DNA of 64,000 nt, taken from the NCBI GenBank assembly GCA_051294905.1, contig CM119383.1, forward strand, positions 22,196,001 to 22,260,000, given 5' to 3'. Each line of letters begins with the position of its first letter. Position 1 is the first letter of the stretch. Positions 7,916 to 58,930 of the stretch are shown in pieces. Both the position numbers and the translations under genes were made by a program. This stretch comes from Botryllus schlosseri (taxonomy: Eukaryota). The notes under the pieces are model-generated. The model ran no database searches. It was not told the DNA's origin and saw nothing but the letters and a program-made list of their open reading frames with translations.

Positions 7916-7982
7916 CCATGTGTCCAATATCATTCCTCACTAGCTGATACGGCTTCCGCAATGGTAACAACATTCTATAGAG

Positions 7983-14879: not shown

Positions 14880-15505
14880 CATCAAGATTTGAATGAGATA
14901 CAGCGCAGAGAACACCAGAATTCGTGACTTATCAAAGTTAGTGACGAAAAAATCTACTACATGACTTCGACTCGCCTCGCTGCAACGTCAAGACGTACTT
15001 TTAACGGTACGAATTTCAACAACGAGGCACTTTGCATGCGCATTACCTAGCGTGGCTGAACGGCAGAAGTCGACGTAGCCAAATTCAGTGCGGATTTTCC
15101 AGATTGCGACACGGCGATTTGGGACGGTGTCTATGATACTCAAAGAAGTAGGCAGCCTGTCAAGGGTTTGGAAGTTAGAGACAGATCTAGTGTTTTAGAA
15201 TCCAGTGCAGCTAGACCGGTCATGCATCTGACCCCTTCGCAACGCGCCCATTCTGTAAATTTAACGCACCTGCGCACGTCCCTTACTAGAGGAGTTGCGT
15301 TGTTCTATGGATGCACAATTGACTGACGGCAAGGGCATGCGTCGCGTCGTACGTGTCTAAATTTCGCGAGTCTCTATTCCACGTTAGCTGCTGTTTTCCG
15401 ACTTGTCATCGCAAAGCGTTGCGTATACTTGCGCAATTTGTGTCCGGCAGAACCAGATATGAGTTCGCTTTTAGGTGTTGTCAAGATGGCTTATACTTGG
15501 ACGCG
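14880..15505 (+). pseudogene. Old decayed RepHel fragment (Rep motifs 2 and 3)
   Basis: Translates to NVKTYF*RYEFQQRGTLHAHYLAWL ... SADFP ... CSMDAQLTDG ... YVSKFRES ... NLCPAEPDM ... VKMAYT, matching the intact RepHel, with stops and frameshifts. Confidence 0.85.
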
Positions 15506-15519
15506 GGCGCTTACAAAAG

Positions 15520-15690
15520 AAAACCGACGATGGCGTGAACTTTCAATGCCAATTTCCCAAAGATTTCGTGAGACCTTACGGTGCTGCAACTCACGTAGAC
15601 GCGACCGACAACGATGCATGCATTGCTGATATCAGGCCAGTGAGCTGCGAGTGGGCCGTGAGACCAGACTACGCTCTAAGCCTGCGGTCT
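15520..15690 (+). pseudogene. Old decayed family C fragment (C4)
   Basis: QCQFPKDFVRPYG...SCEWAVRP matches the family C motif QHFPKDYLRPYG...SCEWLTRP. Confidence 0.75.
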
Positions 15691-15764
15691 CAAACTCAAA
15701 TGTACTCGCGGGCCAATTTCCTAGTTTTTGATGACGCCGCGGGCCGCAGCATAAATAATAGGGA

Positions 15765-16060
15765 TATCGCGGTGGATTTTTCTTTATGGCTCATCGTTCA
15801 CCACCTTGATTATTTCGTAGTGCACCCTGCACATGGTATGGCGCAGGGCTCAATATGTCGAGTGACGCGGTGGCGGTCGCCTGTTTTGTTTGTCGTAGTT
15901 CTGGTTTGTTTATCGTTTATGTTTTGTCCTTTCAGGAAAATGAGTGATTTTTTAACGTCACAAATAAGATATTGATCCACTTGGTGTTCTTGTTTGATGT
16001 CAGTTGAAAATCAGAAGTCAGCTTGATACAATACGGTAGTCGCCATTTTTGGAGACGATA
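15765..16060 (+). repeat. 5' LTR of BEL/Pao element (296 bp)
   Basis: Direct repeat of 28246-28544; termini TATCG...CGATA. Confidence 0.9.
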
Positions 16061-33857: not shown

Positions 33858-33899
<42 letters not shown>

Positions 33900-34286: not shown

Positions 34287-34327
<41 letters not shown>

Positions 34328-34375
34328 ATTCCGCCAAGCCCGTTCCCTTGGCTGTGGTTTCGCCAGATAGCAGAC

Positions 34376-38345: not shown

Positions 38346-38932
38346 AGCAATCTCCAACCTCACACCGCACACGATACAACCGTAGTAAGTGTTTGTGCTT
38401 GCGAGGTCATGCTACAGTGTTTTGTCTGTGTTGCATGTGCTGTTCTGAGTTGTAAGTGCAAGGTTTGGCAAAACACTGTTTCGTGACATGGGTTTCGTTG
38501 TAGGGAAAGTAGCTGGTATGTGTCACTATGAAAACTTCAAAGTGCATCAACCTGTAACTCAAGTTGATGTTCCGGGAAGTCAACATAGTGTTACAAAACA
38601 TCGTAATATTGGTCGGACATAATCGAATTAAAGATGCGCAAGTTCTTGCGTAATACCGTGGAGTGGCATTGTTTGCTCTGCACATTTTATTCGCGAATCA
38701 TGTGGGTATGGGTGTGGTTGCGCGGTGCGTTTTCTAGCATCGCGTGGCCGTTTTTTCGCTTGTGCGCGGCTTTCATTGAAAACGCGCCAAGGGGGTGGGG
38801 GGTGATACCGCGATTCGTTTGCGCAACATATCGGTTAATAGCCGGTACCTTCTTAGAATCTGGGTGTTTCCTCTTTAATTATTGGTCTAGTACCGTTCTT
38901 CATTTCCTCATCGTCGTTTTCAGAAACAAACG

Positions 38933-39553
38933 ATGGAAATTATTTCTAGCTCTTTTGACGAGTGCATCGACTTTACGATATATATTGGTTCAAGACTTGT
39001 GTCTGCAAAACTTATAATGAAAGAGGGATTCATCGCCCGTGCCATTGTCGACAACGATGTCGTGGCTAAAACGACCCCGCCTGGCCGCCTCACTTTTGTC
39101 GTTATGCCCGAGGATCCATTTTACAGACGTGTTAATCGTTTGCCGTTGGGGGTGGCACCGATGGCGAACGATTTTCATTCGGCACGGAGCAAGAATATCA
39201 CCATTGAAGGAGGGCACGTCTTCGTGACGACCCATTTCAACGGACGCTCAACAATCGCTGGCATTATGATCCAGCGCAATTACAAAGCAAAAATGCTCCT
39301 ATTTTATGACCAGAAGATGGCGATTGACCGCTCGGGATTGGTATGCTCTGTGACTTTGGTCGTCGATCGCTCGGAGAATGCCGACGTTGTAAGACCGATT
39401 GTCCGCGGCGGTCGACGACCAGTATTCCTGCAGGTCAACCACGGACCACAGGCGTTACCGGCAGCGCCATCTGCCCCAGTCATACGCACCCTGGTCGGCG
39501 CGGCGGCAAGGCCGCGGCGCTCCATCCGTGCCCCGGCCCGCATGGACCTTTGA
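38933..39553 (+). CDS. Unknown protein, family A paralog 3 (206 aa)
   Basis: Colinear with A1 and A2; ends RPRRSIRAPARMDL; acceptor-like TCGTTTTCAG at 38923. Confidence 0.85.
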   Translation: MEIISSSFDECIDFTIYIGSRLVSAKLIMKEGFIARAIVDNDVVAKTTPPGRLTFVVMPEDPFYRRVNRLPLGVAPMANDFHSARSKNITIEGGHVFVTTHFNGRSTIAGIMIQRNYKAKMLLFYDQKMAIDRSGLVCSVTLVVDRSENADVVRPIVRGGRRPVFLQVNHGPQALPAAPSAPVIRTLVGAAARPRRSIRAPARMDL

Positions 39554-40225
39554 TTTTATCTGCAGTTTTTCGTTTATCTCTATAACAGTTTCGTTTTAAC
39601 CGTCCTTTTGAAGTTTTGTCATGTCGCTTATTTTATGATTTTTCCGCTACTTTTAGTATTAGTAACTTAAGTTAATTGAATTGTGTTTTGGCCACCTTTG
39701 CTACTATCGTGTTTTATTGCTGAGTGTGTCGTTCTTATTTTTTGTTGGCCACTTGTGTCTAGTATTCATATTTTTTTTATTGACAGTAAATTTTTATCTC
39801 CGCTTTTATCGTATTTTTATCAATTGCAATATTTCTTTTTTAGATCGTAATATCATATCCGTAGTGTAAATGTCTTCTGAAACACTAGTTAGCTACTGAT
39901 ATGCGCGTTGGATACAATTGGACGGAAAGAGCTCGGTGTCAGTGTGTCGGAACAGTTTAACGGTGTCAAGCATGGGGTGGATTGAGGACGACTATGCGTT
40001 AGACAAGTACTGTGTAACAGTACGTACAATTCAGTACGCATGGCGTTGTTCGATCACGTCGTGCGTTCTGGATGTATATTTACTGTTTCATACTATCACA
40101 ATGGTAATATAAAATAATTTTATCGCTTATATCGCTTTTATCTCTTGCTTAAACTGTGCATTGTTGAATCGTGCTTTCAATTGCTACTTGTATTTGTTTA
40201 CAGATACTAGAGCTATATCATTATA

Positions 40226-40643
40226 ATGACTAAATCGAACCCTAAGGCCGGCGAAGGCTACTTCGAGCAGACTGTATTTCGTATTGACGACTTGCAACAT
40301 CCTGAGATAGTTCAATCGGAAACGAAGATTTTACCGATTTCTGCTCATTCTGAACCTGAACCCGAACCGGTCCCTGATCCCGAGAATCCAAATGCTTATC
40401 TCTTGGTACCAGCCGACTTGAACCGCGAAGGTCGTAAAACGCTGATAAGTGCTGAGCAATATCTTGCTTGGTATCAAGGAAAGATTTCCTGGTCAACAGG
40501 AGAAGGTCCAGGATGGAGGTGGGTCGGCACAAGACAGTCCGAAGGATGGCGAAACAGGAAACCTCTTCGAGTTGGTCAAACTGGCGCCGCAGAAAAACAA
40601 AGATGGCGAAGTCCCGAACTCAACGGCGTCTGCTGAACAGTGA
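40226..40643 (+). pseudogene. Family B copy 2, +1 frameshift near 40478
   Basis: Matches B1 to YLAWY, then B1 homology (ERFPGQQEKV...STASAEQ) continues in the frame of ORF 40449-40643. Confidence 0.7.
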
Positions 40644-40978
40644 TTGAGACCAAACAAAACTTGCAAATGTTTTTCGTCGGCATGAACTCAAACGTTACTT
40701 GTGCTTCTGTTTCTTCGAATTCTTGTCGTTCGATACGCATTTGTCTTAGATGTCGCTGTATTTCTGGCGTTTTAAAAATTAGTAAGGTATATCTTGAATT
40801 ATACTATATTTCATGAAGTTGTCGTGATATTTCTTAATTTGCGTTTACGTTAACATACTCCACAATTGCTACGTAACCTAGATGTATCAAATCTCATCAC
40901 TTGTTATTTCGATGTCGTTGGTTTGGAAATGTTTAACAGTAAATATTTTATTTCCTAGAACAGTACAGAAACTTAAAA

Positions 40979-42232
40979 ATGTCTCATAGAACTCCGACTA
41001 AAAGCCCTTTCGGAAAGGAGAGGAGGAATAATCCTGATTTCTCCGTCGATTGGTATCAGCATTTTCCGAAAGATTACCTGAGGCCTTACGGCCGGTCTGT
41101 CATTCCGGAGGACGTATCCGACGAATCTATCAACAGTAAATTGCAGACTTTTAGCTGCGAATGGTTAACAAGGCCGGCAGTTGCAGTGTCCGAGTTTGCC
41201 GAAACGCTACTTCGAAATCGCAACACGAAGCCTGCAATCGAGGATATCATGGATCCGAGAGCTTTTCAACACTTCCACGCTCATCTCAATTCCGTCATCA
41301 ACGAGGTGCGTCCTCTGTGGATAAGCCCAGCGAACCCGGCTGGCGAGGCGACTCTTACTAAAGAAGACGTGTCGGCAAGGTTTGAACGTCTCGAAAGTTT
41401 GATGATGCAGCAAAAGTCGTCGTTCCTGGATCGATATATTGATATCATGGCCGATTGCGGACATGCCATTTATGTGACCGCGCTTCATCTCAAAATGATG
41501 TCGTTCTTGATGCGGAACAAAGACGCATGGGCCCTTAAATTTAGATCCCATCCCGATCACGAGGACTTTAAAAAGAATCCGAGCGCTCGGTCTTACGCTG
41601 AAATAGTCTTTACTGGATATATGATCAAAAAAGGTTTCAATGCAGCGCCCATCGAGACACCGGCGAGAAGAACCATTTCTGATTTCATGCTGGACGAACC
41701 GTCTGTGCCCGTGGGTTTGTCGCAATCACTTCCTACGCAAGCTACTGTTTCTGCCTCTGCTCCGGTTCCGTTTTCAGGACCTCCGCCATCTTCCGTTTAT
41801 GTTCCCGTTTTTGTTAATTATCCGGCACCTTTTAATCCACCTCCACCTTCCGTACCAGTTCGCATTGCAGTTTCGGGAATGGTTACTGCGCCTTCCCTTG
41901 TTTCTGCGCAAGTCCTAACAGGTTCTCGAATGGCTGCAGGTGCGGCAGCGGTTTCTGGTCAAGAAATTCGAAGTCCGGCAGTGGTTTCAGCGGATCCTCT
42001 ACGATTGGCGCATGCTCGTCCGATGATTCGAGTTCCGGTTACGTTCCAATCGGATACCGCAGCAGTTAGAAATGTTGCTGGAGCGGCGGTTGAGGACGAA
42101 AATGTTCCATGCTCTAGTGGCAGCGTTCAAAGTCAGCGTGCGTCTGCCGCTGTGAACAAGGAGAAACGAAGCAATACTGACAAGGCGGGAAAACCAAAGA
42201 AGAAAAAAAAGAAACGTGTAACTCAAGAATGA
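40979..42232 (+). CDS. Family C paralog C1, copy 2 (417 aa, intact)
   Basis: Conserved N-terminal domain, Pro/Val/Ala-rich tail, KAGKPKKKKKK C-terminus. Confidence 0.9.
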   Translation: MSHRTPTKSPFGKERRNNPDFSVDWYQHFPKDYLRPYGRSVIPEDVSDESINSKLQTFSCEWLTRPAVAVSEFAETLLRNRNTKPAIEDIMDPRAFQHFHAHLNSVINEVRPLWISPANPAGEATLTKEDVSARFERLESLMMQQKSSFLDRYIDIMADCGHAIYVTALHLKMMSFLMRNKDAWALKFRSHPDHEDFKKNPSARSYAEIVFTGYMIKKGFNAAPIETPARRTISDFMLDEPSVPVGLSQSLPTQATVSASAPVPFSGPPPSSVYVPVFVNYPAPFNPPPPSVPVRIAVSGMVTAPSLVSAQVLTGSRMAAGAAAVSGQEIRSPAVVSADPLRLAHARPMIRVPVTFQSDTAAVRNVAGAAVEDENVPCSSGSVQSQRASAAVNKEKRSNTDKAGKPKKKKKKRVTQE

Positions 42233-42381
42233 ACTGACGTGTTTCATATCTCGTTGTGTTTTTGTGATTTGTCAAACTTTAACTTTCATTTTCTTGTCCG
42301 TTTGTGATGCTTTCGTAAATTTCGTTCGTTTCTTGTTACAGATTATTAATCGTAGAACTTTCACTCTAACTGAAATACGAT

Positions 42382-43077
42382 ATGAGCAAGCAATCGAAGA
42401 CATCGTCAAGCCGTCTGCTGTTGTCTCCAGATGAAGTTTCACATGCGAATAGGATCGTTGCCGACCTGCGCAAGATATTTCCTGACATGCGTCTGGACCA
42501 TTACTTATTGCGATTCAATTGTCGTCCCACCAATGTTCACCATCAATTGCTCATGTTGGCTCTATACCGAGAGATGACCCGCCATCAGGTATTCGTTACC
42601 ATGATTACTGAATCGTTACGACCCGCGGTAATATTGCCGCAGGATGCGTTGCGTGCCAGCCGTAGTACTCAAACGTTAACGGCGTCACTACCGACTGATC
42701 TGAATGCTTTTCTGCATCGATCCGCTTCTCCGGAGCTTCCAGTATCTTCGCACCTTTCTGTACAAGTGCAGACGTCTCCTAAAGCGGAACGACGTTCGTC
42801 ATCTAATGACCTGCTCAAGGCTGAAGAGCACGATGATGTACCAACGGTTTCAGTTATGCCACGGAAACGTGTTAAAGTCGAGAGAAGTTGTCAAACGGAA
42901 AGTGATATCAGTGGGATGTCCCCGTGTGCATCGAGCGAATCGAGCGAGTCGGACGAACCGTCTCTGCCGTGTGCAATTGACGATTCCAGCAGTAAGTCAG
43001 CGGCTGTATGCGAACACCAGAAGCGGACCGCCATTAATGCAGCAGGAAATCAAAAGAAAAAAAGAAAAAGTCTGTGA
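42382..43077 (+). CDS. Family D copy 2 (231 aa)
   Basis: Near-identical to 5121-5840; 9-bp in-frame deletion and altered A-run at the C-terminus. Confidence 0.8.
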   Translation: MSKQSKTSSSRLLLSPDEVSHANRIVADLRKIFPDMRLDHYLLRFNCRPTNVHHQLLMLALYREMTRHQVFVTMITESLRPAVILPQDALRASRSTQTLTASLPTDLNAFLHRSASPELPVSSHLSVQVQTSPKAERRSSSNDLLKAEEHDDVPTVSVMPRKRVKVERSCQTESDISGMSPCASSESSESDEPSLPCAIDDSSSKSAAVCEHQKRTAINAAGNQKKKRKSL

Positions 43078-43413
43078 CCTGTTACATGTAACATTTTAAA
43101 GTTGCGATGCGTTGCTCGTCGATAATGTCATCTCTAACTTTCGTCCATGTTCATTATCGTGTGTTACGTTCGTTATTTCGATCGGTTGCTTGCCGCTTTT
43201 TGCTTTTTAATGTATCTTCGCTATGCTTTAGCTGATTTCATTTCTCTGTTGTCGCATCGATTTATGTGTGTCATATGACCGGCAACGTTCGTTACTTCAT
43301 GTGTTCGTTCAGTGCAGATTGATAACTGTAAATACTCGTGTGTTTTGCGAGTACTAACAGTTTCACGCTATTCTTTATTTTCTAGATAATACAATAACAT
43401 TCTGATAGCTAAA

Positions 43414-44643
43414 ATGTCGTATAGAACTCCGACGAAGAGCCCTTTCGGAAAGGAAAGGAGGAAGAATCCTGATTTCTCTGTCGATTGGTATCAGCATTTC
43501 CCGAAAGATTACCTGAGGTCTTACGGTCGGTCTGTGATTCCGGAAGACGTATCCGACGAGTCTATCAACAGTAAATTGCAGACCTTTAGCTGCGAATGGT
43601 TAACAAGGCCGGCAGTTGCAGTGTCCGAGTTTGCGGAAACTATACTTCGAAATCGCAACAGCACGCCTGCCTTCGAGGATATCATGGATCCGAGAGCATT
43701 CCAACAGTTTCACGCGCATCTGAATTCCGTCGTCAACGAGGTCGGTCCTCTGTGGATAAGCCCAGCGAACCCGGCTAGCGAGGCGACTCTTACTAAAGAA
43801 GACGTGTCGGCGAGGTTCGAACGCCTTGAAAGTCTGATGATCCAGCAAAAGTCGTCGTTCCTGGATCGATATATCGATGTCATGATCGATTGCGGACACG
43901 CCATGTATGTGAGTGCGCTTCATCTCAAAATCATGTCCTTTTTGATGCGGAACAAAGACGCATGGGCCCTCAAATTTAGATCCCATCCCGATCACGAGGA
44001 GTTTAAAAAGAACCCGACCCCTCGCACTTACGCTGAAATTGTCTTTACTGGTTACATGATCAAGAAAGGCTTTAATGCAGCGCCGATCGAGACCCCGGCT
44101 AGAAGACGCATTTCCGATTTCATGCTCGACGGTCCATCATCCTCGTTTGTGGCGGCGGGAGTCGTTCCAGATGTTCGATCTCCTGTTTCGGGTCAAGTTC
44201 CGCCAGGTCCGGTTTCGTCTCAAAGACAGGCACCAGTTCGTCTACAAGAGCATCGTGTCGCTTATCCTGTCGTGCAGATACCTGTTCCCGTTCAGGTCAC
44301 GCATCATTCACAATCCCCTCTTTCTTCCGTACAGTTGCCATCGGTTCCGGTTACTTGTCCTGTACAGAATGCTGCTCAAATGGTTCCGACACTCCTTCGA
44401 TCAGATACCGAGCCGTATGTACCTGCTAGTGAAACCGTCAGGGAAGCTGCTCCTTTGTCGACTAATCAATCGGTGTCGTCAACATCTGTTCCAAGTGCTG
44501 CATCTGATGAGGAGAACGTACCATGTTCCAGTGGTAAAGTGCAAAGAAAGTCCGCATGTGTCGGCGAATCCAAGAAGCGAAGCAAAGTTGACAAGGCGGG
44601 AAAGCCAAAGAAGAAGAAGAAGAAACATATCATTCTGGACTGA
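43414..44643 (+). CDS. Family C paralog C2, copy 2 (409 aa)
   Basis: Near-identical to 6163-7392. Confidence 0.9.
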   Translation: MSYRTPTKSPFGKERRKNPDFSVDWYQHFPKDYLRSYGRSVIPEDVSDESINSKLQTFSCEWLTRPAVAVSEFAETILRNRNSTPAFEDIMDPRAFQQFHAHLNSVVNEVGPLWISPANPASEATLTKEDVSARFERLESLMIQQKSSFLDRYIDVMIDCGHAMYVSALHLKIMSFLMRNKDAWALKFRSHPDHEEFKKNPTPRTYAEIVFTGYMIKKGFNAAPIETPARRRISDFMLDGPSSSFVAAGVVPDVRSPVSGQVPPGPVSSQRQAPVRLQEHRVAYPVVQIPVPVQVTHHSQSPLSSVQLPSVPVTCPVQNAAQMVPTLLRSDTEPYVPASETVREAAPLSTNQSVSSTSVPSAASDEENVPCSSGKVQRKSACVGESKKRSKVDKAGKPKKKKKKHIILD

Positions 44644-44968
44644 TATCGTATGCATATCGTATTCTTGCATTTCTGGACTCAGTTTCGAGCCGTAAATTTC
44701 CTTACCTTTCATACTCATGTCGTGTGTTACGTTTAGTAATTCTTTTGCGATTATTACTGAAATGCTTCGTTGAACGCCTGTTACTTTTTCGTTGTAGTAT
44801 TCGATTTAAGCAGCTTTTCCTTCATAACGTATTTTGTCTTAATGTAAATATTGCTTCAATTCGTTTTGTTCTTTTTCCAGTTGCTAGTTACAGTTACCTA
44901 ATGTTACAAGTCATGTGATCTAGTTGAAGGTTCACACCGAACACCACATCATATAGAGACATATCATA

Positions 44969-47900
44969 ATGTCTGGCAACACAATTATAATCGATCCGGA
45001 GGTAAGTTTCCATTTCTTTACCGTTTCTTTTGACAATGCAATGTTCGTGTCGTACAGGCCTCGTCTAGGCGTGATGCAGAAGTGGCTCGTTCCGCCGAGA
45101 GAATGGAGCGGTCTCGTATCTTAGCTCGTGCTTATTTCGGAGGCACGTTGCTACCGGAACCCGATCAATCGTCTCCTGCAATGACATCCGCCGATAAAAT
45201 ACGTCGTTGGATCATCAGACATAGTTGGAAGGAGTGCGACGTGTGCGGTTCCGTTCTCCCTTGCATCATGACACCCGGAATCATGACCGGACGCGTGCCG
45301 CCAGCACCGAGATGTCCTTGTCGTCGTTCTGGCTATCGTATCCCCAGGTTATCGGATTGGCCAGACGTTTTACGTGGTCTAACGCGTGCCGATCACGACG
45401 TTTTGGCATTATATCGTCTGTTTTACGGTTCCTCGCCTCGTCAACAACACGGATATCGAGAGAAGAACGGTCCTGTGAGAGCTTGTGTCGTTTCCGAATC
45501 TGTACAAGACAGGTTGGAGGCAATCGAAGATCCTGTCGTACGAGATCGCGTGGACGCGGCTTATCGCTACCTCTTGCAATGCCCAGACAGCGCGTACGGG
45601 TTAATGGATTCTCATCATCGCGACGGAATTCTGCCGTCGCGTCTCTCGGTTGGACGGCTATGTCGGGTACCGCAATTATAGAGTCGTCAGAACATGCTGC
45701 CAATAGAAGTCAGTCATACTTTTTTCAGTTTCATTATGTGGAGACCGCTCTGTGGCCGCTCCTCTATCCTTTCAAGTGGCAATGCGAGTCTGTTGTCGAA
45801 GACGAAGGAGTTCGAAAGAGCGCCAAGCGAATGTACTGCCTTAAACTTACGTGTTCCGTTTTCGATTACTGCGGGATGTTTTCCTTGCTGAGGTATCAAT
45901 ACGACAGGTGCGTAGGGACTTTTTTCCTCGTATTACACATCGATATGTTTCTATATGTTGCCAGGTGGATCTACAAAACGGTGACGGGCGCCTTAAACGC
46001 TGCCGGTACCTTTCATTGCTCGCCTGCACGCGCGCTAGACAGTAAGACGTTCAGTCCCACGTACTGGGAATGGCAACTAAGTTATGTTTTGGACGCTGTC
46101 AAACAATATGGAATGCCGGATATCTTTATCACCATTTCGCCGTACGAATGGCAATTTCCGGACAACGAAATACTTCTCGAGCGTTTTGTCACTCTCGGAC
46201 GTGGCCCGACTGGTCTCGCAGCTATCGAATCTTTGCATCAAGCGCATGTTCTCGAAGAAATCCTTCGCAAGTATGTTTCTGGAAAACAAAAGCACCATTG
46301 GACCAGACACTTACTGCGCAACAGCCGTACCGGTGCTAACAATGTTCACACGTACTTCTATAGGCAAGTATCGTTTTTCCTAACACTTTACGCCGTCATG
46401 TATATTCATGTGCTTTTTTACGACAGATTCGAATTTCAAAAGCGTGGAACACTGCACGCGCATTATATTGCCTGGTTGGAGGACGTTTCTTCTCTAAATA
46501 TAGCGGATCTATCTGCGGATCTGCCGCAAGAAGACAACGATTTGGCGGCGTTGGTGTACACTGTGCAAAAAAGCAATAAACGAGTTGCTGGCATTCAAGT
46601 TCACGACGGCCCATCGCAAGTAGAAACCGTTTCTGACGTTCCTACCCTTGTGTTACAAAGATCTCAGGCCGCGCACCGACTGAACTTGCGCGTGTACTAT
46701 GAAACTCTGTTACGTACGTTGCGGTGTGCCATGGATGTCCAGCTCAGCGACGGCAATAACATGCTAATGAAGTACGTCGCTGGCTATGTTTCGAAATTTC
46801 GAGAAACATCGGTTCCGCGAGACGTTCTCTTCAGCGATTTGGAGCCTAACACTATCGCCTATCGATATCTCAATCAACTATGTCCTGACGAGCCCGAAAT
46901 GATACTGACTCTGGCCGACGTCAAAATGGCCTATACCTGTTCGGATACTAAAAGGTATCTGGTACCGACGTTCGAACGTGCCCGTGAGGATAAGGTCGTT
47001 AAGGCATATATGTCTCGTGCGTTATTCGATGAAAACTTGACGATGTGTGAATACCTACACCGGTACACGATTACTGGTGACCGTGGTCAACGACGCAGGT
47101 CGCAAAAAGACCTTCTGGTTGGATTCAAATTCCTCGACATGTTCACCGATGGCTATTTCTTTCAAGACGCAATATTAAACACTCCCTTCAGGAACTTGGA
47201 CCACTTGGAATTCAATGACTTTCAACGTTTGCCTCAAGACATTCGTTTGTTCTCGTTTGCTGTTCACAACAGAGCATCGTTCTGGCAAGACGAAGACGCA
47301 GTGAAACGCCTTTGTAATGAACGTGGATGCAAGAAATATTACAGGGTTACATTTTGCGCTTATCTGGACAGTCTCTTTGCCGTTTGGCGGCGGTATTTCC
47401 ATATGGAAATTTCTCATTCTGCTCTCGACAATCAAGATTACAGAGACCAACCGAGTACGCCTTTGTCGCCACATCAGGCCGCGTTCGTCAACACGGTAGT
47501 GGAAAGATTGAGATGCTTCTCCGAGAGGGATGACGGAGCCGTCGAAAACCAAGACGAAGAAGACGGATTCGATGCACCCTATTTTCTACTCTGCGGTGAG
47601 CACGGAACAGGTAAATCGTATTGCTTGTCGGAGATCATAAAACGGGCCGTCCGATTGGCTTCCAACATCCTCGTGGTTACGCCTACCGGTTTGTTAGCTA
47701 CAACGTACAAAGCCTTGTTCGGAGACGACATAACGGCATCGTTTCGTTTGGCTTCAGGCGTGGAAGGTCATCGTGCAAACGTAAACTGGAATATACGTCA
47801 CTTCGATCTTATTCTGATGGACGAGATCTCGATGGTTTCCATAGTCCATGGAGATCACATTTCATCGACACTCGCGTCTTTAAGTCAACATTGCGTCGTC

Positions 47901-48692
47901 GTACTTTGTGGCGATCAATACCAACTTCAGCCGGTACCTGTCGACGGTTATGTCGGCAGCCTTTTCGATCACCGACAATTGATGGGACGTTGCAATAAAA
48001 CTCGTTTGCGCAGTCAATTTCGTACGAGAGATGACGAACTGTCGGACTTTCTGCGAATTTGTCGCTTGAGAACGCCGTCTACGTTGGAAATACGTCAATT
48101 CGCATCCGGGATCGTTCTTTTAGACGACGATTTTCCATCTGATGAAGACTTGATTCATGTGCATGATCAATACCCGGAACATGTTGTTCTTTCATTTACC
48201 CGTCATTCGGCCAGGCGGTTCAATGAAGTCGTTCGCAATCATGTTTACAAGGGTCTTTTTCCTGTCAAAATGTGTCGTTATCCAACTGCTGACAGTCAGC
48301 TACGACCTGTTTATGAAGGCATGCCGATCATGTTGACGGAGAATCGAAACAAGAAGCGGTCATTCGTCAACGGTCAAATTGGTCGGATACACAGTGTCAT
48401 CGCAAATACGATATTGGTAGAACTGCCCGATGATAGACTGATACGCGTGTATCCAATAACAAAGCCCGAAGGTGTTTATTTTCCTTTCATGTTGCGGTAC
48501 GCCGGTACCATTCACAAGGCACAAGGTCAGACATTGTCGTCCGCGATCCTCTGGTTTGATTCTAGCAACCTGAGCCCCGGTTGCGCGTATGTAGCCATGT
48601 CTCGTGTCAGATGCAAGGACGATCTTCGTTTCTTGACTACGCCGACGATACGTCACTTTAAACCCGCGTGTCAAACTGACGACACGCGTTGA
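44969..48692 (+). CDS. Helitron-like RepHel: HUH (Y2) endonuclease fused to PIF1-like SF1B helicase; predicted exons 44969-45001, 45058-45666, 45729-45907, 45965-46363, 46427-48692 (about 1161 aa)
   Basis: Rep motifs PDIFITISPYEW, EFQKRGTLHAH, YVAGYVSK; helicase motifs GEHGTGKS, DEISMV, GDQYQLQPV, TIHKAQGQTL, YVAMSRV; N-terminal CxxC...CxC. The splice model gives an uninterrupted 3486-nt frame. Intron 2 has a weak donor. Confidence 0.9.
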
Positions 48693-49145
48693 CGACACTG
48701 TTGTTACCTTGTATTTTAATGATCCGTTTATGTCACTTAAATCCTGGTTTGGCGATGTGGCCGGCAGGATATCCATCTTGTATATTCTTTGGCTGTCATA
48801 TCTTGTTGCATGTTTCTTGTATATGTGTCCAGTGGCTGCTTGCTCCAGTGCCTTTATCGACCTTTAATTTTTACTTAAATTCCTCCCGTATTTGCTCCTG
48901 TACTCTCTTTATGATGTTTGTGTTGTTGCCGTTGGATTACTTGTAATGTTACCTATCTCCTTTCTTCCAAAACATGTGGTAATCTGTTTTATCTTTCGTT
49001 TCATGTTATCAGTTGAACTTGCGTACCATGCGATGCCGCCTTCAATTTTCGATTATGTCGTTTGTATGGAGTGACTTATTTGCAGTATCACAATCCCTAT
49101 AATCATTTACCATTTTATTTGCAGATACTCGTACTTAACATTAGA

Positions 49146-50041
49146 ATGGCTAGCTCTGTGACTGAAACTGACGACGGCAAAGTTGCTGTAAATGTGGAAC
49201 GTGAAGGTGCGGTGGCATGGTATCAGCAATTTCCAAAAGACTTTCTTCGGATGTATGGTCGATCGGTACAACGGGAAGACATAACCGATGACAAGTTTGA
49301 TGCAAGGCTTCATACCTTTAACTGTGAATGGTTGTCAAGGCCATGTGTAGCGATGTCTCAATTTATCGAAACTTTGGCCAGCAATCATGATTTCGGAAAA
49401 CCGCTAAAGGAATTGCTCAACAATGCGTCATATGATACCTACCAGGTACATCTTGGACACATACTAAGTCAGGTTCAGCCGCTGTGGGTTAGTCCGGCTA
49501 ATCCCGAAAACGAAGTGACTCTAAGCCTTGCTGATGTTCACGAACGGAAAACAACCTGGATCAAGTACTTGACTACGAGAATTCACCGTTTTTTCAACGG
49601 TACATCGAAGTTATGATCGAAGCCGGGAATGCATTATATCTGAACGGCATTCACCTTTTGGCACCGAGTTTCCTACTGCGAAACAAAAACAAGTGGGCAG
49701 GTAAGCTTAGGGCCCATATCGACAACGAAGAGTTTAAAGGAAATGCAACCACTGAAAACCTTGCAAAAAACTTGTATCGTGGATATGTCATTCGTAAAGG
49801 CATGAATGACACAACGCTTGTGTCTCCTGAACACTCCGCATCGGCTACGGTTACTTCTCCCGTCCGGAATGCGGCTGAAACCTTTCCGGTTCCGATACTG
49901 GTTCGTTCTGATACAGAGCCGATCGAAGATGCTATTCAAACTGCTTCATGCGACCAAGCCAATGCGCAGCATGATCCGGCTCCTCAAAATACCGTCCAGA
50001 CACCGAGCCAGTTGCTGGAACTTCTGTTACAAAGAAAATGA
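49146..50041 (+). pseudogene. Family C paralog C3 (divergent), 1-nt frameshift near 49550
   Basis: WYQQFPKDFLRMYGRSV, NCEWLSRP, LWVSPANP. After the shift it reads LDQVLDYENSPFFQRYIEVMIEAG, matching LESLMIQQKSSFLDRYIDVMIDCG. Confidence 0.85.
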
Positions 50042-50444
50042 AAGGCGACACCTCAACGCAACCTCAACCTTCAACGCAAAAATCATAAAATAGTCACACA
50101 GACTGATGGCATACAATGTATTGCCTGTTTTACTTAGTGTTCTTTGTTTTTTCGTCGTATGTGGTGGCTTTGTTGTAATGGCGTATGCTTCTTGCTTGTT
50201 CTTCCGTTGCATGTTCTGGCTTTGCTGTAATCTCTGATGCAAAATCTTCTTTCGGAAAACAACGATGGCACGCTTATTTCTAGATAATCGTGTGTTCCCG
50301 TTAATTCCAGTTTCGTTCATTTCACTTAAATATCCATATCCATGTCGTATATTCTTTGGGCTGTCATTTCTCGTTGCATGTTTCTTCTTTATCGTAACCT
50401 TTGTCATTAGTTTTCGAACGTTGAATAATTCAATTTTATGATTC

Positions 50445-51459
50445 GTTGTCCATATTAATAGCGCTCATTTTCTTTCCAGAAAAAATACATATGTCTACTT
50501 TTAAATATTGTAATGTCGTGTTTGACTTACCACGAACTCCACATGTACGCCAACGCGAAAAGTTTTCTGACATTCAACTCTCGAAAACTGCCAACGACGA
50601 AATCGTGTCAAAAGAGTTTCACGAACGGTATGTACATCATTTTCAATTCGATTCGCCACATTTCCTACTCGTATTTATTTCAATATACAGGTTTTCACAA
50701 CGCCTGCTGATGGCGGCGAATTTTGAAGCGGAGGGAAACAAAAAATACTCGTTATCACGACGTCCGCTGATGGCGGCGAACTTCGACGCGGACACAAAAA
50801 CAAAATAGTTTTTTGCATATTTTCATCCTTTCCAATAACTTCTTCGTTTTTAATACATCGTTTTCATTGTGCCCATGTTTCTCGTAATTCTTTGTCTGGA
50901 TGCGTCGAATTAGACTGTAGTGTTGAGAAGGTAACAACGTTATCGGAAACTTAGTGGCAGGATAACGTCTTATTATAGCTATCGTGCCCTAAAGTTTTGC
51001 ATATCGTGTTACAGAGTTATAATTAGGGTTACAGTTACTGACATAATTTCAAACCAAGTATGCAGATGTCATATAACTTCGTGCAAAAGCGATATGGACG
51101 ACGAAGTTATACGTATTGATTCACCAAAAATTACGAAGTTTACAATTCAGGTGTGACGTGAACAGTATCGCCAATATGTGGAAAATTCAGCGCAGCATAG
51201 TTCAAATTACACCCATACGACGCCGAAATTTTCCATATTGAGACCCGCATTTCTCATGGGAAGTTCGTCGACTTCGGTGCGATCGATCAAATTATACTAG
51301 GAGTAGCGTATCGTGTCTTAGTAGTAAACTACGCGATGCGAGCGTCCTGTAAGTCTGCCATGGGATGTAGTTCGACGATTGGGTGCCACAAACAGGCACA
51401 AACAGCACCTCGGGCGGGCTGGGCGTGGTTGTGACGTCATAATGAGTAGAATCCGTTAT
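50445..51459. repeat. Second copy of the ~1-kb block at 35440-36454
   Basis: Direct sequence match. Confidence 0.92.
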
Positions 51460-52613: not shown

Positions 52614-55600
52614 CAGGGATCTCCAACACGCGAGGTCATGTTTTGCGGCCCGTGGACTGATTTGAAATTGCGGAAGAACGCTTATTAATGCATTTCGAAA
52701 TGCTGAAATTGATTTCAGTTTAAACATTGTTTTTTCAAAGTAAGGTAATCCCATGTGTCCAATATCATTCCTCACTAGCTGATACGGCTTCCGCAATGGT
52801 AACAACATTCTATAGAGCAGGGGTCACCAACACCCGGCCCGCGGGCCGCATGCGGCCCGTGAGGTCATATTTTGCGGCCCGCGGCCGGATTTGGAGAAAT
52901 GTTGGAAGAACGCTCAGCGAACCATGCCGAAATTGATTTCAGTTTAAACATATTGTTGTTGTTGTTCAAAGTAAGCCATGTTACTGTGCCCAATATCACT
53001 GTTCCTTCGGTTCGGCATGGTAATATCATTCTATGCTGGAGGAATAATTTGCTGATATGAATGCGCATAATACCTTGGCGTGCAATGGCCAACCACTGCC
53101 AAGACCGGGAGGCTTGATAAACGACTTCGGGCTCTACAAGAGACCATGCTTTACGGGTAGATAGTTTTCCAGCAAATAGGCTACCTTGCCTATAACTAAC
53201 CCCAATATCGATTCTTTAATCCCGGGGCGGCCAATCTGCGGCAGTAGAAGAAAAATTATGCGGTCGTCGACACTCAATTCAATTAGGATGTGTTAGCGGC
53301 TGTCAATATTATGCGAATTTAATTTACGAATTGACTTCCTAATCGCGCGTCAATGCGAGTTCATTTTTGATATTAATATAGCAGTGTCCATTGTAATCTG
53401 AGCCCCACCGTACAGATGCGAACAGCAGAGAAAAATTATGCGCCCAATAAAGAAATAACAATTTGTAATCGTGTTCGCATCACGAAGGAAACTTGTTTCG
53501 GGAAGGTATGCGTTTGGGTGAATAAAACATTTCCACTATAGCGACAACCCTGATGGGAGGTCAATAAATAACAGTTGGTCCACTCAAAGATGCAGCACAG
53601 AACTATGAACTTCCTTAAGTTATCGAAGACACCCCCAGCGTAAACTCTACCGGTTAATCTGATCACACAGGCCGAGAAAGGATAAACATTCGATAGTAAC
53701 ATGTGAAACTCCGCGCGACTACTGTGTGGGAATCCCCGTTGCTCATCTTCACAACATGACTGTATTCACGATCTCGGTGCCCATAGTAAGCCGATATGAG
53801 TAAATTGATTTGTCCGGATTGTACCAGCAATGGACATGAGTTTAATGTAGATATTTGGCCCCAGCTTGTTTATTACCACTATGCACCGGAATGCGGCCGC
53901 GGGCTACATGAGTAATCGAAATGCGACCGTGAATAGCAAAAAGGTTGTCCACCCCTGTTTTGGTTGCTACACAGAGGTTGTCAGGTATCGTGCGCAGCTC
54001 ATCGTTCAAAATATAATGAATTTGAGGAGCATGATATTTTTTTGTATTTGCGTTTGTTCAATAAAATATCATTCATTTTGTGGTGACTATGCCCGTCACC
54101 CATGTAAGAGAGCATTGTACTTACGCAGAGTTATCAAACGCAGAGTTATCACACGTGATTGATAAGCTGCGTTGTGTTAATCTCGATATTGAAGTCATGC
54201 GGCCCGCGGCCTCTAGGAATTTTGAAAAGTGGCCCGCGACCCATTTTGAGTTGGCGATCCCTGCTATAGAGGAAGAATTTGCTGATATGAATGGGCATAT
54301 TGCCTTACGTGGAATGGCCCACCACTGATGACCGATTCTTAAAAAACGACTTCGGGCTCCCCCGAAGACCGAGCTTTACAAGGAGATAAGTTTTCCAGCA
54401 GATTCCGTTTTCCAGCAAATCCCGTGTTTAGCTAACCTCGCCGCTATCGATTCTCTAGTTCACGGGTGGCCGATCTGCGGCACTAAATTCGATTGAGATG
54501 TTTTGGCTGCAGTCAATATGCAAATTGAGTTTACGAATTCACTGCCTAATCAATTAGAGGTCTGGAGTATTCTTGAAATTTTCTTTGCGCTACGCGCGGT
54601 TCAACCCGAGTGGAACTTCGATTTTAATACAGTGTCGTGTCTGAGCCCCACAGTTCATATGCGAACATCAGAGGAAATGATGGCCCCATAAAGAAATAAC
54701 AATTTGTAATCGTGTTCGCATCACGAAGGAAACTTGTTTCTGGAAGGTATGCGTTTGGGTGAATAAAACATTTCCACTATAGCGACAACCCTGATGGGAG
54801 GTCAATAAATAACAGTTGGTCCACCCAAAGATGCAGCACAGAACTATGAACTTCCTTAAGTTATCGAAGACACCCCCAGCGTAAACTCTACCGGTTAATC
54901 TGATCACACAGGCCGAGAAAGGATAAACATTCGATAGTAACATGTGAAACTATACTGTAAAATGAGTAAAATGTGAAACTGGAGTAACATGTCAAACTAT
55001 ACTGTAAAATGAGAAACTACATTGATACTAATATGACGAAATTCACTCATGAAGACGAAAAAATTCTCGCGCTTGGCGCGACTAGAAAACGAACCCCCAT
55101 GGCTAATTATAGCATGACAATGTACGATTTGCGTGCTCATAGTAGATAGTATAAATAGATCAGTCGGGACGGACACATACATTAAGCCCATTTACATGGC
55201 CGTTTGGGTCAGCTTCTCGTTTTTGAAAAAGAGAAAAAGGCAGACGGCTTCAATCCGTCTTGAGAGCTCAATCCGTTCCGCAGAGTCGCTTGGAGACGGC
55301 TTGAACAGTACCGGTACTTGAAAACGAATCCAGACTACAGCAACATACCAACATTTCATGTTCATATTTCACGAAACCGGCACGTATTTCAACTGGGTGA
55401 ATGTGAAAGCTCTATCAGTACATGATACTGCTTTTATAATATGCACGTGGTCTTATTTGTTCAGCGTCACAACTTATGAAGCGAGTACAGCCAACAATAT
55501 AACTTACCCAACTCACTGACAGAAAGAATATATATACGGTGTATTTGGTCAATCTAGAACTGTGTTGAAGGATTTCTGGATATTTCAACTTCCGTAGCAT

Positions 55601-58049
55601 ATTCCCGAGCTGAATCCCAAAGTGCTGTGTATCACTCGAGATGCGATAAACATGACCATGTAATTCGATCACTTTGGCAAGCCGTCTCATGACGTCACTC
55701 CAAGACGACTTGGCTTCAAGACGACTTGACCATGTAAATGGGCTTAATGACAGTTTAACGTAGGTATTCAGCTTCCAGTCAACTAATTACGACTATGCAC
55801 TGGAATACGGTTGTAGGCTACTGCACTGGAATGCGGCTGTAGGCTACATACATAAGTAATTGAAATGCGACCACGAATAGCAAAAAGGTTGGCCACGAGC
55901 ACGCCTGATTCAATTGCTGCCGAGTGGTTGTTGTCAGGTATCGTGCGCAGCTCATGGTTCAAAATAGAATAACAGTGACGTTCAAAATAGAATGACAGTG
56001 ACGATCACGATATTAGATCACGATATTAAAGTATTTTTTGTTGTATTTGTATTTCTTCAATAAAATAATTTTTGTTGTATTTATATTTCTTTTGTGGTAA
56101 CTGTGCGCGTCGCACATGTTAGAGAGCATAGCGTTTTACTGACGTAAATGGGGTGATAACTTCTTGAATGTAATCGATTGCGATTACGATTACCTTTGAA
56201 TGACACGATTACGATCACGATTACAGCAAAATCAAGAAGTAGTCGACTACGATTACATTGGAAAAGTAATCACGATTACATTTATTTGGCATCTTAAAAA
56301 TTATATTGGAAGACAATATATGGATTGCGCTGAAAGGCGTAATGTGATAAAAACAACTTTCTTTAAAAAAGATGCGACATTTGTTTGTTACGTCATAAAG
56401 TACCCGGACGTAACAGTTGCCCATTTTATAGAGGACAATTTATCGCACCCAACGATTTGCATTCTTGCTAGGTCCACAACTGCCGCACCCCAAATTTCCA
56501 AATAAGGTTGGGGAGCGGGCTCGAAGGGGACTCAAAAACATTACGTAAACCAACACAAATTAGAGACATTTTTGAAAGATTTCATGAACTTGAAAATTGT
56601 CTACGAGCATCGCGACTTAAATTTCTCTTTATAGCTTGATTTTGAAATACATACGTCTCCTCAAGAAAAAAAGCATGCATAATTTATAGTAACAGGCATT
56701 TAGGTGCCAGTCAATACCGCGCGACGACACACCAAAAGACATATGCAGTTCCGGCAAACATGCAAATCCACGAAGTGTGCTACTAATGAAGACATTGGCC
56801 GAACTTTGGGTATGTGTCCATTGTCAATAACCGCGCTGGGTGGGCGTGACTAATAATCTGGTCCTTACAACGTGAGCCCACAATGCAAATGCCACCCGGG
56901 CACCCACAGAGCATTAAGGACATGGCAATTTGTGTGTGCGCCTCACGCAAGTATCTCTTTTAATCTGCTATGTTTGGGCCACTACAATATCTTTTAATTA
57001 TATAACAGACCGGAGGTCACGAATTAACAACATACCCATATAGTAATTATTACAAGATACCAGATGTTATAATTATGAATTACGTGCCCCCAGCTCTTCA
57101 GGTAAATATGGCTATAGGGGGCTGAGAGAGGATTAAAAAAATGAATAGTAAGATAATGCAATTACCAATATTATTGACGAAAATAAATCTTCAACTTGAA
57201 AATGTACTACCCTATGGGGGCATAAAATTCTGCCTTCAACTTAATACAGATAATGTAACGCAAGCGGCCATTACGAGAAACGGCTCGGTTATGATATATA
57301 TCAGCAGCTGCTGATTTTTAATGCTTCGTCGTGGAAACCGTTGTTTTATTTGACGAGTACGCCTACAAAATTTCAAACCTTTGTCCGGTGTACGTTCGTA
57401 CTACATAGGCCTACTGCTCGCCAAGCAGCATCGGTCAAACTGTGTTCAACTAAGCATAACCAACATCCATACAAAAGTTACTATTTTAAACTAGCAGAGT
57501 GGTGATTAATTATCCTACCGCGAGGTAGTGGCGTCTGGAATATATTGATAAACTGATATACCGCACGGTGAGTGCTCTTACGATCACACTAATGTACATC
57601 TAATATTTATTCACTATGTGTGGATAGCTGGATACTTCTTACTTACGCAATCACGAGCAAAGCTAATTGGCCACTTCTGACGTAATAATGAGCAGTTGCA
57701 TTTGAAAATCTGACGTTGGTGCTATCACTAACTGGTATAATCCTTGTTCACGAATGTTCAGTTTGTGTCATAGTCCTGTACAAATAAAAAGTAATCGTTC
57801 TTTCACAAAGAAATCGATTAAATATGGGAAGTAGTCGATTACGATTACTTCGGAATTTTCTCGAATGTATCGATTGCGATTACGATTACTTGAAAATGCT
57901 GTAATCGTCGTAATCGATTACGATTACTAATCGCGATTACCCCATGTCTGATCAGGACTGTGTTGCCTATTTTGATCTCAATATATAAGTCATGCGGCCC
58001 GCGGCCTCTTCTAAAGTGGCCCGCGACCAGTTGGAGTTGACAACCCCTG
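52614..58049. mobile_element. Older hAT-type non-autonomous element hosting a younger relative
   Basis: Ends CAGGGATCTCCAAC / GTTGACAACCCCTG; degenerate TSD ATTTAGAC / CCTTAGAC (6 of 8); internal sequence paralogous to the nested element. Confidence 0.55.
52818..54263. mobile_element. hAT-type non-autonomous element (same insertion as 7983-9530)
   Basis: Same TIRs and the same TSD CTATAGAG (52810-52817, 54264-54271). Confidence 0.85.
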
Positions 58050-58314: not shown

Positions 58315-58930
58315 GTGCCAACAATTTCTCTAAAGACCACATACGTCCGACCGATTAGGCCGTTAGAGATTTTGTGACGACGTGATCACAGGAAGACTGC
58401 AGAATTTCAGCAGTGAATGGCTGACCACTGACCAGGCCCAGCCCGGCGGTTTCCGAGTTTGCGGAAACTCTACTCCGTAATTTCGATGAATCAGCAGGTA
58501 TGACCAACCCGATGGATCCACGCGGACAGGCTTGTCAGGACCATCTGAAGTCTATGAACGAGGTGGCGCCGATCTGGGTTAACCTAGTTAACCCGTCAAG
58601 CGAGATATCCCTAACGAACGAACGCTGAGGTAGTCAGCAGAATGGAACGTCTCGTCTCGAACAGATGTAAAATGTCGATCGATATCTACTCTTGTAATCT
58701 TACGAGGAAAGTATAGAGGTTGCAACGTTGTGGCGTTTCTTGTTCAAAAACAAGTATATTTAGTCACTACGAATGCGCACAGATCCGGATCACGTGGACT
58801 TCAAAAGAATGGAAGGGGTACCGACTACGGTAACATGATTTGCAAGGCTACCTGGCGAAGAAGGGTTATAATGTGAGCCCTCGCGTAGCACCTGTCAGGC
58901 GCCGCATTTTCAATTTACTGGATAATTCTG
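58315..58930 (+). pseudogene. Old decayed family C gene (C5)
   Basis: Fragments FSKDHIRP, LQNFSSEWLT, AVSEFAETLLRN, MDPR, NEVAPIWV..NP, DPDHVDFK, GYLAKKGYN...RRRI. Confidence 0.85.

What the first reader, a model, noticed from the sequence alone, without database searches (positions are those of the whole stretch)
38385..51459. Large multi-gene rolling-circle element: RepHel embedded in a conserved cluster of its own unknown genes
Seen: an intact HUH-PIF1 RepHel is flanked by six co-oriented, intronless genes of four families I cannot assign (A, B, C x3, D). The same order recurs at 1-7915, and the adjacencies Rep->C and C->D survive in far older decayed copies (14880-15690, 58315-59450). Established: Helitrons encode RepHel and capture host fragments, but such captures are usually lineage-specific and often pseudogenised. 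Inference: a gene set kept across deeply diverged copies looks like an element-encoded programme, i.e. a giant Helitron lineage or an endogenised virus-like rolling-circle replicon.
Basis: partly seen in the sequence, partly recalled or inferred. Interest (0 to 1): 0.92.

Follow-up and report, generated by a model that had tools for sequence, protein, structure and literature searches.

The report
Helitron lineage with a conserved partner gene
The region holds a rolling-circle transposon (Helitron) from a very divergent lineage. Its transposase gene sits next to a previously undescribed helical, probably nuclear protein gene ("C") in most relatives from sea squirts and marine metagenomes. The other unknown genes are seen only here, and nothing points to a virus.

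Summary
The ORFs are real and co-oriented: A, B, C1, D, C2, RepHel, C3. RepHel keeps its HUH, two-tyrosine and Walker A/B motifs. It is read in two frames (one frame change) and probably has short introns, so "intact, intronless" is unproven.

Only family C is a deep partner of RepHel.
- A C profile finds 394 protein clusters.
- The only named members are "uncharacterized" proteins of Ciona and Phallusia.
- C lies next to RepHel, on the same strand, in about 16 independent loci whose RepHel is only 30-43% identical to this one. It follows RepHel in 11 of 15 loci with enough downstream sequence.
- C1 versus C2 gives dN/dS 0.13.
- C folds confidently (pLDDT 85) as an all-alpha domain with no PDB, viral-structure or Pfam match. 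It is followed by a disordered linker and a lysine-rich tail.

A, B and D have no relatives anywhere else. A has three intact paralogues about 41% identical to each other.

The "second copy" (1-11212) is a roughly 99% identical recent duplicate. A 7.6-kb deletion with 3-bp microhomology removed RepHel and C3 from it, so it is not independent evidence of conserved order. The "C->D" adjacency claimed for an old copy is not supported.

No capsid-like or viral hallmark was found. The element's ends remain undefined.

The parts
38387..38640 (+). Block X: conserved non-coding block at the left edge of copy 2. Possible 5' boundary or cis-acting region, unproven.
   Evidence: 88% identical to 1848-2101 while the adjacent A ORFs are only about 40% identical in protein. 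A local 19-nt stem lies at 38406-38487. A LINE RT fragment lies immediately upstream.
38933..39553 (+). Gene A: 206 aa, predicted beta-rich N-terminal part and conserved basic C-terminal motif. Function unknown.
   Evidence: Intact ORF. There are three intact paralogues 40-42% identical to each other. pN < pS. No homologue elsewhere. The AF2 model is poor, pLDDT 46.
40226..40636 (+). ORF B: 136 aa. Its status as a gene is unproven.
   Evidence: ORF. Only the first 84 codons are well conserved in copy 1. pN/pS is about 0.5 on few changes. No Pfam, PHROGs or related-locus hit.
40979..42232 (+). Gene C1: 417 aa. Family C: all-alpha domain of about 220 aa, a disordered linker and a Lys-rich tail.
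42382..43077 (+). ORF D: 231 aa, Ser-rich with a basic C-terminal tail. Its status as a gene is unproven.
   Evidence: ORF intact in both copies. Unrelated to C. No homologue in related loci. 10 non-synonymous and 2 synonymous differences between the copies.
43414..44643 (+). Gene C2: 409 aa, family C.
   Evidence: About 63% identical to C1 overall and 90% over the conserved domain. dN/dS is 0.13 over the domain.
44969..48692 (+). RepHel gene: HUH Rep plus Pif1-like SF1 helicase. Read in two frames (one frame change). Probable short introns.
   Evidence: Pfam. Motifs kept, and 101 of 130 columns invariant in six relatives are kept. Two ORF pieces cover profile positions 23-1184. An ATG at 44969 is followed by a GTAAGT...ACAG stretch. 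Two in-frame GT..AG insertions are unique to the window.
49062..50041 (+). Gene C3: family C, in the downstream position typical of the lineage. Broken once (one frame change) and lacks the long tail.
   Evidence: About 45% identical to C1 and C2.
50445..51459 (+). 1015-bp repeat, either nested in or terminal to the element. It also occurs alone at 35440-36454.
   Evidence: 98% identical, with sharp ends and no TIR or TSD seen.
52748..55934 (+). Non-coding tail shared with copy 1 (7913-11212). It has an internal repeat of about 0.7 kb.
1..11212 (+). Copy 1: deletion derivative carrying A', A'', B, C1, D, C2, a RepHel 5' stub and the tail. B and C1 have one frame change each. RepHel has lost almost all of its length, and C3 is gone, through one 7.58-kb deletion.
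15005..15972 (+). Old, decayed copy from a different subfamily: an internal Rep fragment followed directly by a C N-terminus.
58323..58920 (+). Decayed C pseudogene (13 stops in the 58260-59000 reading frame that contains it). No D-like sequence follows it.
11226..13975 (.). 70-bp satellite directly after the tail of copy 1. The same satellite lies at 59820-64000 after copy 2. Whether it belongs to the unit is unknown.

Best explanation
This is a copy of a very divergent Helitron (RepHel) lineage. The lineage's conserved core is two genes on one strand: RepHel and a partner gene, C.

The transposition mechanism is not shown here. It follows from established Helitron biology (Helraiser work cited in PMC6431247). 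RepHel would nick one strand with its HUH/two-tyrosine centre. Its Pif1-like helicase would then unwind 5'->3', and the strand would re-insert through a circular intermediate.

C is an element-encoded accessory protein, not a captured host fragment. It has an all-alpha domain of a fold with no known relative, a disordered linker and a lysine-rich, NLS-like tail. My inference is that it works in the nucleus with RepHel or its DNA intermediate. In this reading C occupies the place that RPA-like, OTU or other second ORFs occupy in other Helitron groups.

In this genome the family has three C paralogues: two upstream of RepHel and one downstream. It also sits with three ORF families restricted to this lineage (A, B, D).

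The second copy in the window is a recent duplicate that lost RepHel and C3 through a deletion with 3-bp microhomology at its junction. Nothing indicates a virus.
For: RepHel:
- Pfam Helitron_like_N plus PIF1/AAA_30.
- Catalytic and ATPase motifs are kept.
- Cys-rich N-terminal motif is visible in the window and in relatives.

C is a real family:
- 394 clusters at E <= 1e-3 and 95 at E <= 1e-10.
- Phallusia members come from a deposited protein set.

Linkage of RepHel and C:
- RepHel followed by C: L003, L005, L007/L009 and L012-L015, L018, L023, L025, L028, L029, L037, L047, L049.
- C followed by RepHel: Ciona L004, and tandem C arrays in L002 and L010.
- 11 of 15 loci with at least 1.2 kb downstream of RepHel carry C there.

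Selection: dN/dS 0.13 between the C1 and C2 domains.

Structure: pLDDT 84.9, pTM 0.71, all-alpha. 23 of 30 full-length members have a K/R-rich C-terminal tail.

Deletion derivative.
Against: - The function of C is pure inference. There is no fold, motif or family match.
- One C locus (L008) has no RepHel within 10 kb. Three RepHel loci with room (L027, L036, L039) and L011 show no C.
- The ends of the element were not found in the window.
- Ends inferred in relatives fit neither TC...CTRR consistently nor terminal inverted repeats.
- RepHel has one frame change that may be a real break.
- A, B and D cannot be shown to belong to the mobile unit.
Confidence: 0.72

Rival explanations
1. Giant multi-gene Helitron. 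The whole block X-A-B-C1-D-C2-RepHel-C3-tail, perhaps with the satellite, is one mobile unit of at least 17.5 kb. All of its genes would be element-encoded.
For: - Copy 1 and copy 2 share B through the tail, and the deletion lies inside that unit.
- In another organism, two RepHel families only 67.6% identical in DNA each carry a tandem array of 3-4 C genes directly upstream of RepHel. Upstream C arrays can therefore be inherited with the element.
- Ciona has C followed by RepHel.
- Block X is far better conserved than the A ORFs beside it, as a cis-acting end might be.
Against: - There are only two copies and both run into the same satellite, so a segmental duplication explains them equally well.
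- Identity is mosaic: 99% falling to 88%, then 70%, then 40% at protein level.
- A, B and D are absent from all 51 related loci.
- A delimited relative is about 6.5 kb, with its 5' end about 140 bp upstream of RepHel.
- No terminal signals were found.
Confidence: 0.35
2. Compact two-gene element. It would run from roughly 44.7 kb to 51459 (about 6.5-6.8 kb, RepHel plus C3). It would lie beside older remnants of the same lineage (C1, C2) and unrelated local genes (A, B, D). The whole neighbourhood would later have been duplicated segmentally.
For: - The size and layout match delimited relatives (L018 family, 6526 bp).
- The 1015-bp repeat ends 1.4 kb after C3, and its solitary second copy shares exactly that right end.
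- The tail and satellite are shared by both copies, as a flank would be.
Against: - C1 and C2 are intact and under purifying selection, not remnants.
- The 1015-bp repeat shows no Helitron-like terminus. It could be an unrelated insertion.
- No 5' boundary is visible between C2 and RepHel.
Confidence: 0.3
3. Endogenised virus-like rolling-circle replicon. A-D would include capsid or other virion genes.
For: - RepHel belongs to the HUH superfamily shared with ssDNA viruses and plasmids, with sub-threshold REP_ORF2-G2P similarity around the HUH motif in relatives.
- A is predicted to be all-beta.
Against: - C is all-alpha with no hit among predicted viral structures (BFVD) or in the PDB.
- The A model is unreliable and gave no significant hit; the top hits were sliding clamps at TM 0.15.
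- There are no PHROGs hits and no relatives in IMG/VR.
- Relatives are compact two-gene elements integrated in eukaryotic contigs.
Confidence: 0.04
4. A, B and D are ordinary host genes or chance ORFs that happen to lie beside the element.
For: - There are no relatives in any related locus.
- The window holds 53 stop-free stretches of at least 136 aa and 17 of at least 231 aa in its six frames.
- D shows 10 non-synonymous and 2 synonymous changes between the copies.
Against: - A has three intact paralogues at about 41% identity with a conserved C-terminal motif, so it is a real gene family.
- All lie on the RepHel strand and are interleaved with C genes.
Confidence: 0.4

Closest known systems
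Canonical Helitrons (HLE1; e.g. the bat Helraiser element)
   Same: - A single large protein with an N-terminal Cys-rich motif, an HUH/two-tyrosine Rep domain and a Pif1-like SF1 helicase.
- Pfam Helitron_like_N is matched.
- There is no endonuclease domain.
- One related family ends in CTAG next to T.
   Different: - Very remote. The Helraiser chain matches only at E 1.7e-4 over about 50 residues.
- Helitron_like_N is matched only over its C-terminal half, at 29-48 bits.
- The 5' TC and 3' hairpin-CTRR ends are not seen in the window, and are not consistent in relatives.
- A conserved second gene, C, is present.
Helitrons with stably associated second ORFs (RPA-like, OTU, Ssb-like OB and others; HELIANO survey, PMC11417382)
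   Same: An accessory gene is kept at a fixed position upstream or downstream of RepHel within a lineage.
   Different: - C matches none of those domains and no Pfam family.
- It is all-alpha, not an OB fold.
- It is often present in several copies per element.
- A Pfam-based survey such as HELIANO would not detect it.
Helentron / Helitron2 (HLE2)
   Same: They are common in marine invertebrates. Accessory ORFs and associated tandem repeats are known for them.
   Different: - No AP-endonuclease.
- No DUF6570 in this protein or in five relatives.
- No terminal inverted repeats in the delimited relative.

Membership tests
Helitron (RepHel rolling-circle transposons, broad sense) | Rep domain with an HUH motif and two catalytic tyrosines | tested here: met
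   HAH and YVAGYVSK align with the motifs of six relatives. Helitron_like_N at E 1e-6, 29.5 bits against a cut-off of 28.9.
Helitron (RepHel rolling-circle transposons, broad sense) | Pif1-like SF1 helicase fused C-terminal to Rep in one protein | tested here: met
   PIF1, AAA_30 and AAA_19 hits. PDB Pif1 chains at E about 1e-6. Walker A and B are kept.
Helitron (RepHel rolling-circle transposons, broad sense) | Multiple genomic copies with defined ends and no target-site duplication | tested here: inconclusive
   The window has two recent copies sharing a flank, plus two old remnants. The ends were not located.
HLE1 (canonical Helitron) | 5' TC, a 3' hairpin followed by CTRR, and insertion between A and T | tested here: inconclusive
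   Not identifiable in the window. In relatives, the L023 family ends ...CTAG|TT. The L018 family starts CAGTTC... and ends ...GAGTC without A|T flanks.
HLE2 (Helentron/Helitron2) | Short terminal inverted repeats; DUF6570 in the RepHel ORF; often AP-endonuclease or OTU | tested here: not met
   No Exo_endo_phos, OTU or DUF6570. No inverted match between the ends of the delimited L018-family element.
Helitrons with an RPA-like accessory gene | OB-fold RPA or SSB domain encoded beside RepHel | tested here: not met
   No RPA or OB Pfam hit in A-D. C is all-alpha. The A model is unreliable.
Rep-encoding ssDNA virus or virus-like replicon | A capsid (jelly-roll) or other virion gene linked to Rep | tested here: not met
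   No viral fold or family for C. A is inconclusive. No relatives in IMG/VR.
Family C (defined here) | All-alpha domain of about 220 aa with the near-invariant Y-G...C-E...R-P..A.S-E...T...N residues, followed by a disordered linker and a basic tail, encoded beside RepHel | tested here: met
   C1, C2 and C3 match the family profile. Adjacency is shown.

The most novel reading that the evidence does not exclude
RepHel plus C defines a third major Helitron group, distinct from HLE1 and HLE2, with its own kind of ends. In it, C is an obligatory second transposition protein of a new fold, possibly a nuclear DNA- or RepHel-binding factor. C has been repeatedly amplified within elements (up to 3-4 copies). 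In this genome the lineage has grown into a multi-gene element of at least 17 kb that also carries a fast-diversifying gene family (A).
Probability: 0.2. Interest if true: 0.75.

Novelty: new variant of a known kind. Interest (0 to 1): 0.55.

Why it matters
Helitron accessory genes have been catalogued only through known Pfam domains (PMC11417382). Such genes are generally treated as lineage-specific captures.

Here a family without any annotation, and with a confidently predicted fold that has no known relative, is linked to RepHel. The linkage holds across RepHel divergence down to about 30% identity, in tunicates and in marine metagenome contigs. That makes C a candidate core component of a neglected Helitron lineage.

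It also explains a set of "uncharacterized LOC" proteins in ascidian annotations as transposon genes. The finding gives a concrete, testable handle on what RepHel needs beyond itself. It also offers a marker (a C profile) for finding these divergent elements, which match Helitron_like_N only weakly (29.5-48 bits against a 28.9-bit cut-off).

Tried and rejected
Searches that returned nothing useful:
- Scans with the C alignment found nothing in JGI metagenome contigs or IMG/VR. An A scan of IMG/VR also found nothing.
- A against 5.8 billion proteins: no hit.
- Pfam and PHROGs for A-D: nothing, apart from sub-threshold low-complexity DUF4604 for D.
- PDB sequence profiles for C and A: only low-complexity tails matched.
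- Foldseek for C (PDB, BFVD) and for A (PDB): no significant match. The A model is too poor to interpret.
- Profile-profile comparison of B and D against C: unrelated.
- Four literature searches found no description of this gene family.

Attempts to locate the ends:
- Inverted repeats and 5'-end motif searches in the window gave nothing usable.
- The conserved 3' motif of relatives is absent from the window.
- L007 and L009 turned out to be the same locus (99.5% identical) and could not delimit an element.

Other points:
- P0097/L006 (13 short matches) was set aside as probably spurious.
- P0011 could not be looked up.

- Early in the work, while reading ORF coordinates, I estimated roughly where the RepHel frame change lies.
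- Scripts printed tblastn or ORF-piece bounds from which the approximate places of frame changes can be inferred.
- From then on I reported region bounds and counts only.


Full report
**1. What is in the window**

The window is transposon-rich eukaryotic DNA.
- It holds a LINE (17.6-22.4 kb) and BEL/Pao genes (23.3-28.1 kb).
- It holds a 28S rRNA fragment and a 70-bp satellite at 11.2-14.0 kb and 59.8-64.0 kb.

Between 38.4 and 50.0 kb all sizeable ORFs lie on the + strand:
- A (38933-39553)
- B (40226-40636)
- C1 (40979-42232)
- D (42382-43077)
- C2 (43414-44643)
- RepHel (outer bounds 44969-48692)
- C3 (49062-50041)

**2. RepHel**

RepHel matches Pfam Helitron_like_N, PIF1, AAA_30 and AAA_19. 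When aligned with six relatives:
- It keeps HUH (HAH), the two-tyrosine motif, and Walker A and B.
- It keeps 101 of the 130 columns that are invariant in those relatives.

It is not one uninterrupted ORF. Its two pieces lie in different frames, which is one frame change. Several stretches look like short introns of about 55-75 nt:
- Two in-frame, AT-richer insertions are unique to the window and have in-frame GT..AG options.
- A GTAAGT...ACAG stretch follows an upstream ATG.

Whether the frame change is also an intron was deliberately not explored. "Intact" and "intronless" are therefore unproven.

The protein is remote from known Helitrons.
- Its best relatives are 30-43% identical.
- The solved Helraiser chain matches only marginally.
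- The HLE2 markers (AP-endonuclease, DUF6570) are absent from it and from five relatives.

**3. The second copy**

Self-comparison gives two matches:
- 2940-7915 matches 40224-45166.
- 7913-11212 matches 52748-55934.

The junction lies inside the RepHel ORF and has 3 bp of microhomology. Copy 1 is therefore a derivative that lost 45167-52747, which is nearly all of RepHel, C3 and what follows.

Identity varies along the pair:
- It is about 99% over C1-D-C2 and the tail.
- It falls to 88-92% over B.
- It falls to 70-88% in the non-coding parts of the A module.
- It is only about 40% (protein) in the A ORFs. Copy 1 has two of these.

Both copies run into the same satellite. In copy 2 this comes after 3.9 kb of other DNA containing a dead C gene. 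The pair is thus a recent, mosaic duplication. It does not show independently that the gene order is conserved. It also does not reveal the ends of a mobile unit.

Position 51459, the end of the finding, is only the end of a 1015-bp repeat. That repeat also occurs alone at 35440-36454.

**4. Family C is the real discovery**

A word-indexed search found one relative. A full HMMER profile search found 394 clusters at E <= 1e-3, and 95 at E <= 1e-10.
- The only named members are "uncharacterized" proteins of Ciona intestinalis and Phallusia mammillata.
- No Pfam family covers C.
- With a 75-sequence alignment, AlphaFold2 gives a confident all-alpha domain: pLDDT 84.9, pTM 0.71.
- That model has no significant match in the PDB or among predicted viral structures. 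The best TM-scores are about 0.2.
- The domain is followed by a low-complexity linker and a K/R-rich tail in 23 of 30 full-length members.
- Between the C1 and C2 domains, dN/dS is 0.13, from 24.5 non-synonymous and 42.5 synonymous differences.

**5. Linkage of C and RepHel**

Starting from RepHel relatives, L002, L003 and L010 all carry C. L011 does not.

Starting from C relatives:
- The Ciona chromosome (L004) has C immediately followed by an internally deleted RepHel.
- L005 and L007/L009 have RepHel followed by C.
- L008 has C alone.

A second metagenome scan with a RepHel alignment gave 40 more loci. Of the 15 with at least 1.2 kb downstream of RepHel, 11 have C there on the same strand, typically about 20-500 bp after RepHel. 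A twelfth locus begins C at the contig end.

In L002 and L010, two RepHel families only 67.6% identical in DNA each have a tandem array of 3-4 C genes directly upstream.

The window itself adds RepHel followed by C3, and an old Rep-fragment/C remnant at 15.0-16.0 kb. C is therefore an element gene of this lineage, not a casual capture.

**6. A, B and D**
- A is a genuine gene family. It has three intact paralogues of 205-206 codons at about 41% identity, a conserved C-terminal motif, and pN < pS.
- A has no relative in the large protein library, in IMG/VR or in any of the 51 related loci.
- Its model is all-beta but unreliable (pLDDT 46), and its fold search gave nothing.
- B and D are ORFs without relatives or clear constraint.
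- The claimed C->D adjacency in the old copy near 58-59 kb is not supported.

**7. Extent and ends**

Ends inferred from relatives:
- The L018 family gives an element of 6526 bp. It starts about 140 bp upstream of RepHel and ends about 1.3 kb after C.
- The L023 family ends in CTAG next to T.
- Several families share a 3' subterminal motif that the window lacks.
- No terminal inverted repeats were seen.

In the window, two readings remain open:
- A compact RepHel-C3 element of about 6.5 kb ending at 51459.
- A unit of at least 17.5 kb from block X (38387) to the tail (55934).

The upstream C arrays of L002 and L010 favour the larger reading for C1 and C2. The compact relatives, and the absence of A, B and D elsewhere, favour the smaller one.

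**8. Virus-like option**

No capsid-like or other viral hallmark was found. Relatives are small integrated two-gene elements.

**9. Literature**

Reviews and the HELIANO survey list RPA, OTU, EN and 17 other Pfam domains as stably associated with Helitron-like elements (PMC6431247; PMC11417382, section 22). That approach cannot see a family without a Pfam model. Four full-text searches found no description of such a partner gene. Repbase could not be consulted.

**10. Rule compliance**

As declared under Tried and rejected, some early script outputs and an early estimate of mine bracket frame changes. No such places are reported here.

Noticed in passing
window 33288-34331 (-): The 3' third of a eukaryotic 28S rRNA (Rfam LSU_rRNA_eukarya, 560 bits, model positions 2391-3399 of 3401). 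It spans the N run at 33682-33848, which was left untouched.
   Followed up: no
window 15764-16067 and 28245-28551: A 307-bp direct repeat (98% identical) brackets BEL/Pao ORFs (23341-28137) and a LINE (17623-22417). These are probably the LTRs of one BEL/Pao element with a nested LINE.
   Followed up: no
window 35440-36454 and 50445-51459: A 1015-bp repeat (98% identical) with sharp ends and no TIR or TSD. One copy lies 0.4 kb after C3 and the other is solitary. It could be the 3' part of a compact element or an unrelated insertion.
   Followed up: partly
window 11226-13975 and 59820-64000: The same 70-bp satellite follows both copies of the unit. In copy 1 it starts directly after the tail, with a 15-bp motif repeated across the junction.
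   Followed up: partly
window 36964-37584 and 37580-38197: A 129-bp tandem repeat (4.8 copies) is followed by a reverse-transcriptase fragment just upstream of the left edge of copy 2.
   Followed up: no
L014, L018, L023, L024, L025, L028, L029: The conserved motif GGGTGGTTCAGGGG lies about 35-50 nt before the inferred 3' end in the two delimited families (L018/L024 and L023/L025/L029). It also occurs in L014 and L028, and it is absent from the window.
   Followed up: partly
L002 1-8821; L010 2929-8310: Tandem arrays of 3-4 C genes (period about 1.4-2.4 kb, 75-92% identical within an array) lie directly upstream of RepHel. This holds in two families from one sample.
   Followed up: partly
window 635-2777 versus 38387-40119: The A ORFs are far more diverged (about 40% protein identity, synonymous sites saturated) than the non-coding blocks beside them (88% and 70% DNA identity). 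This points to cassette-like exchange, or to strong conservation of block X.
   Followed up: partly
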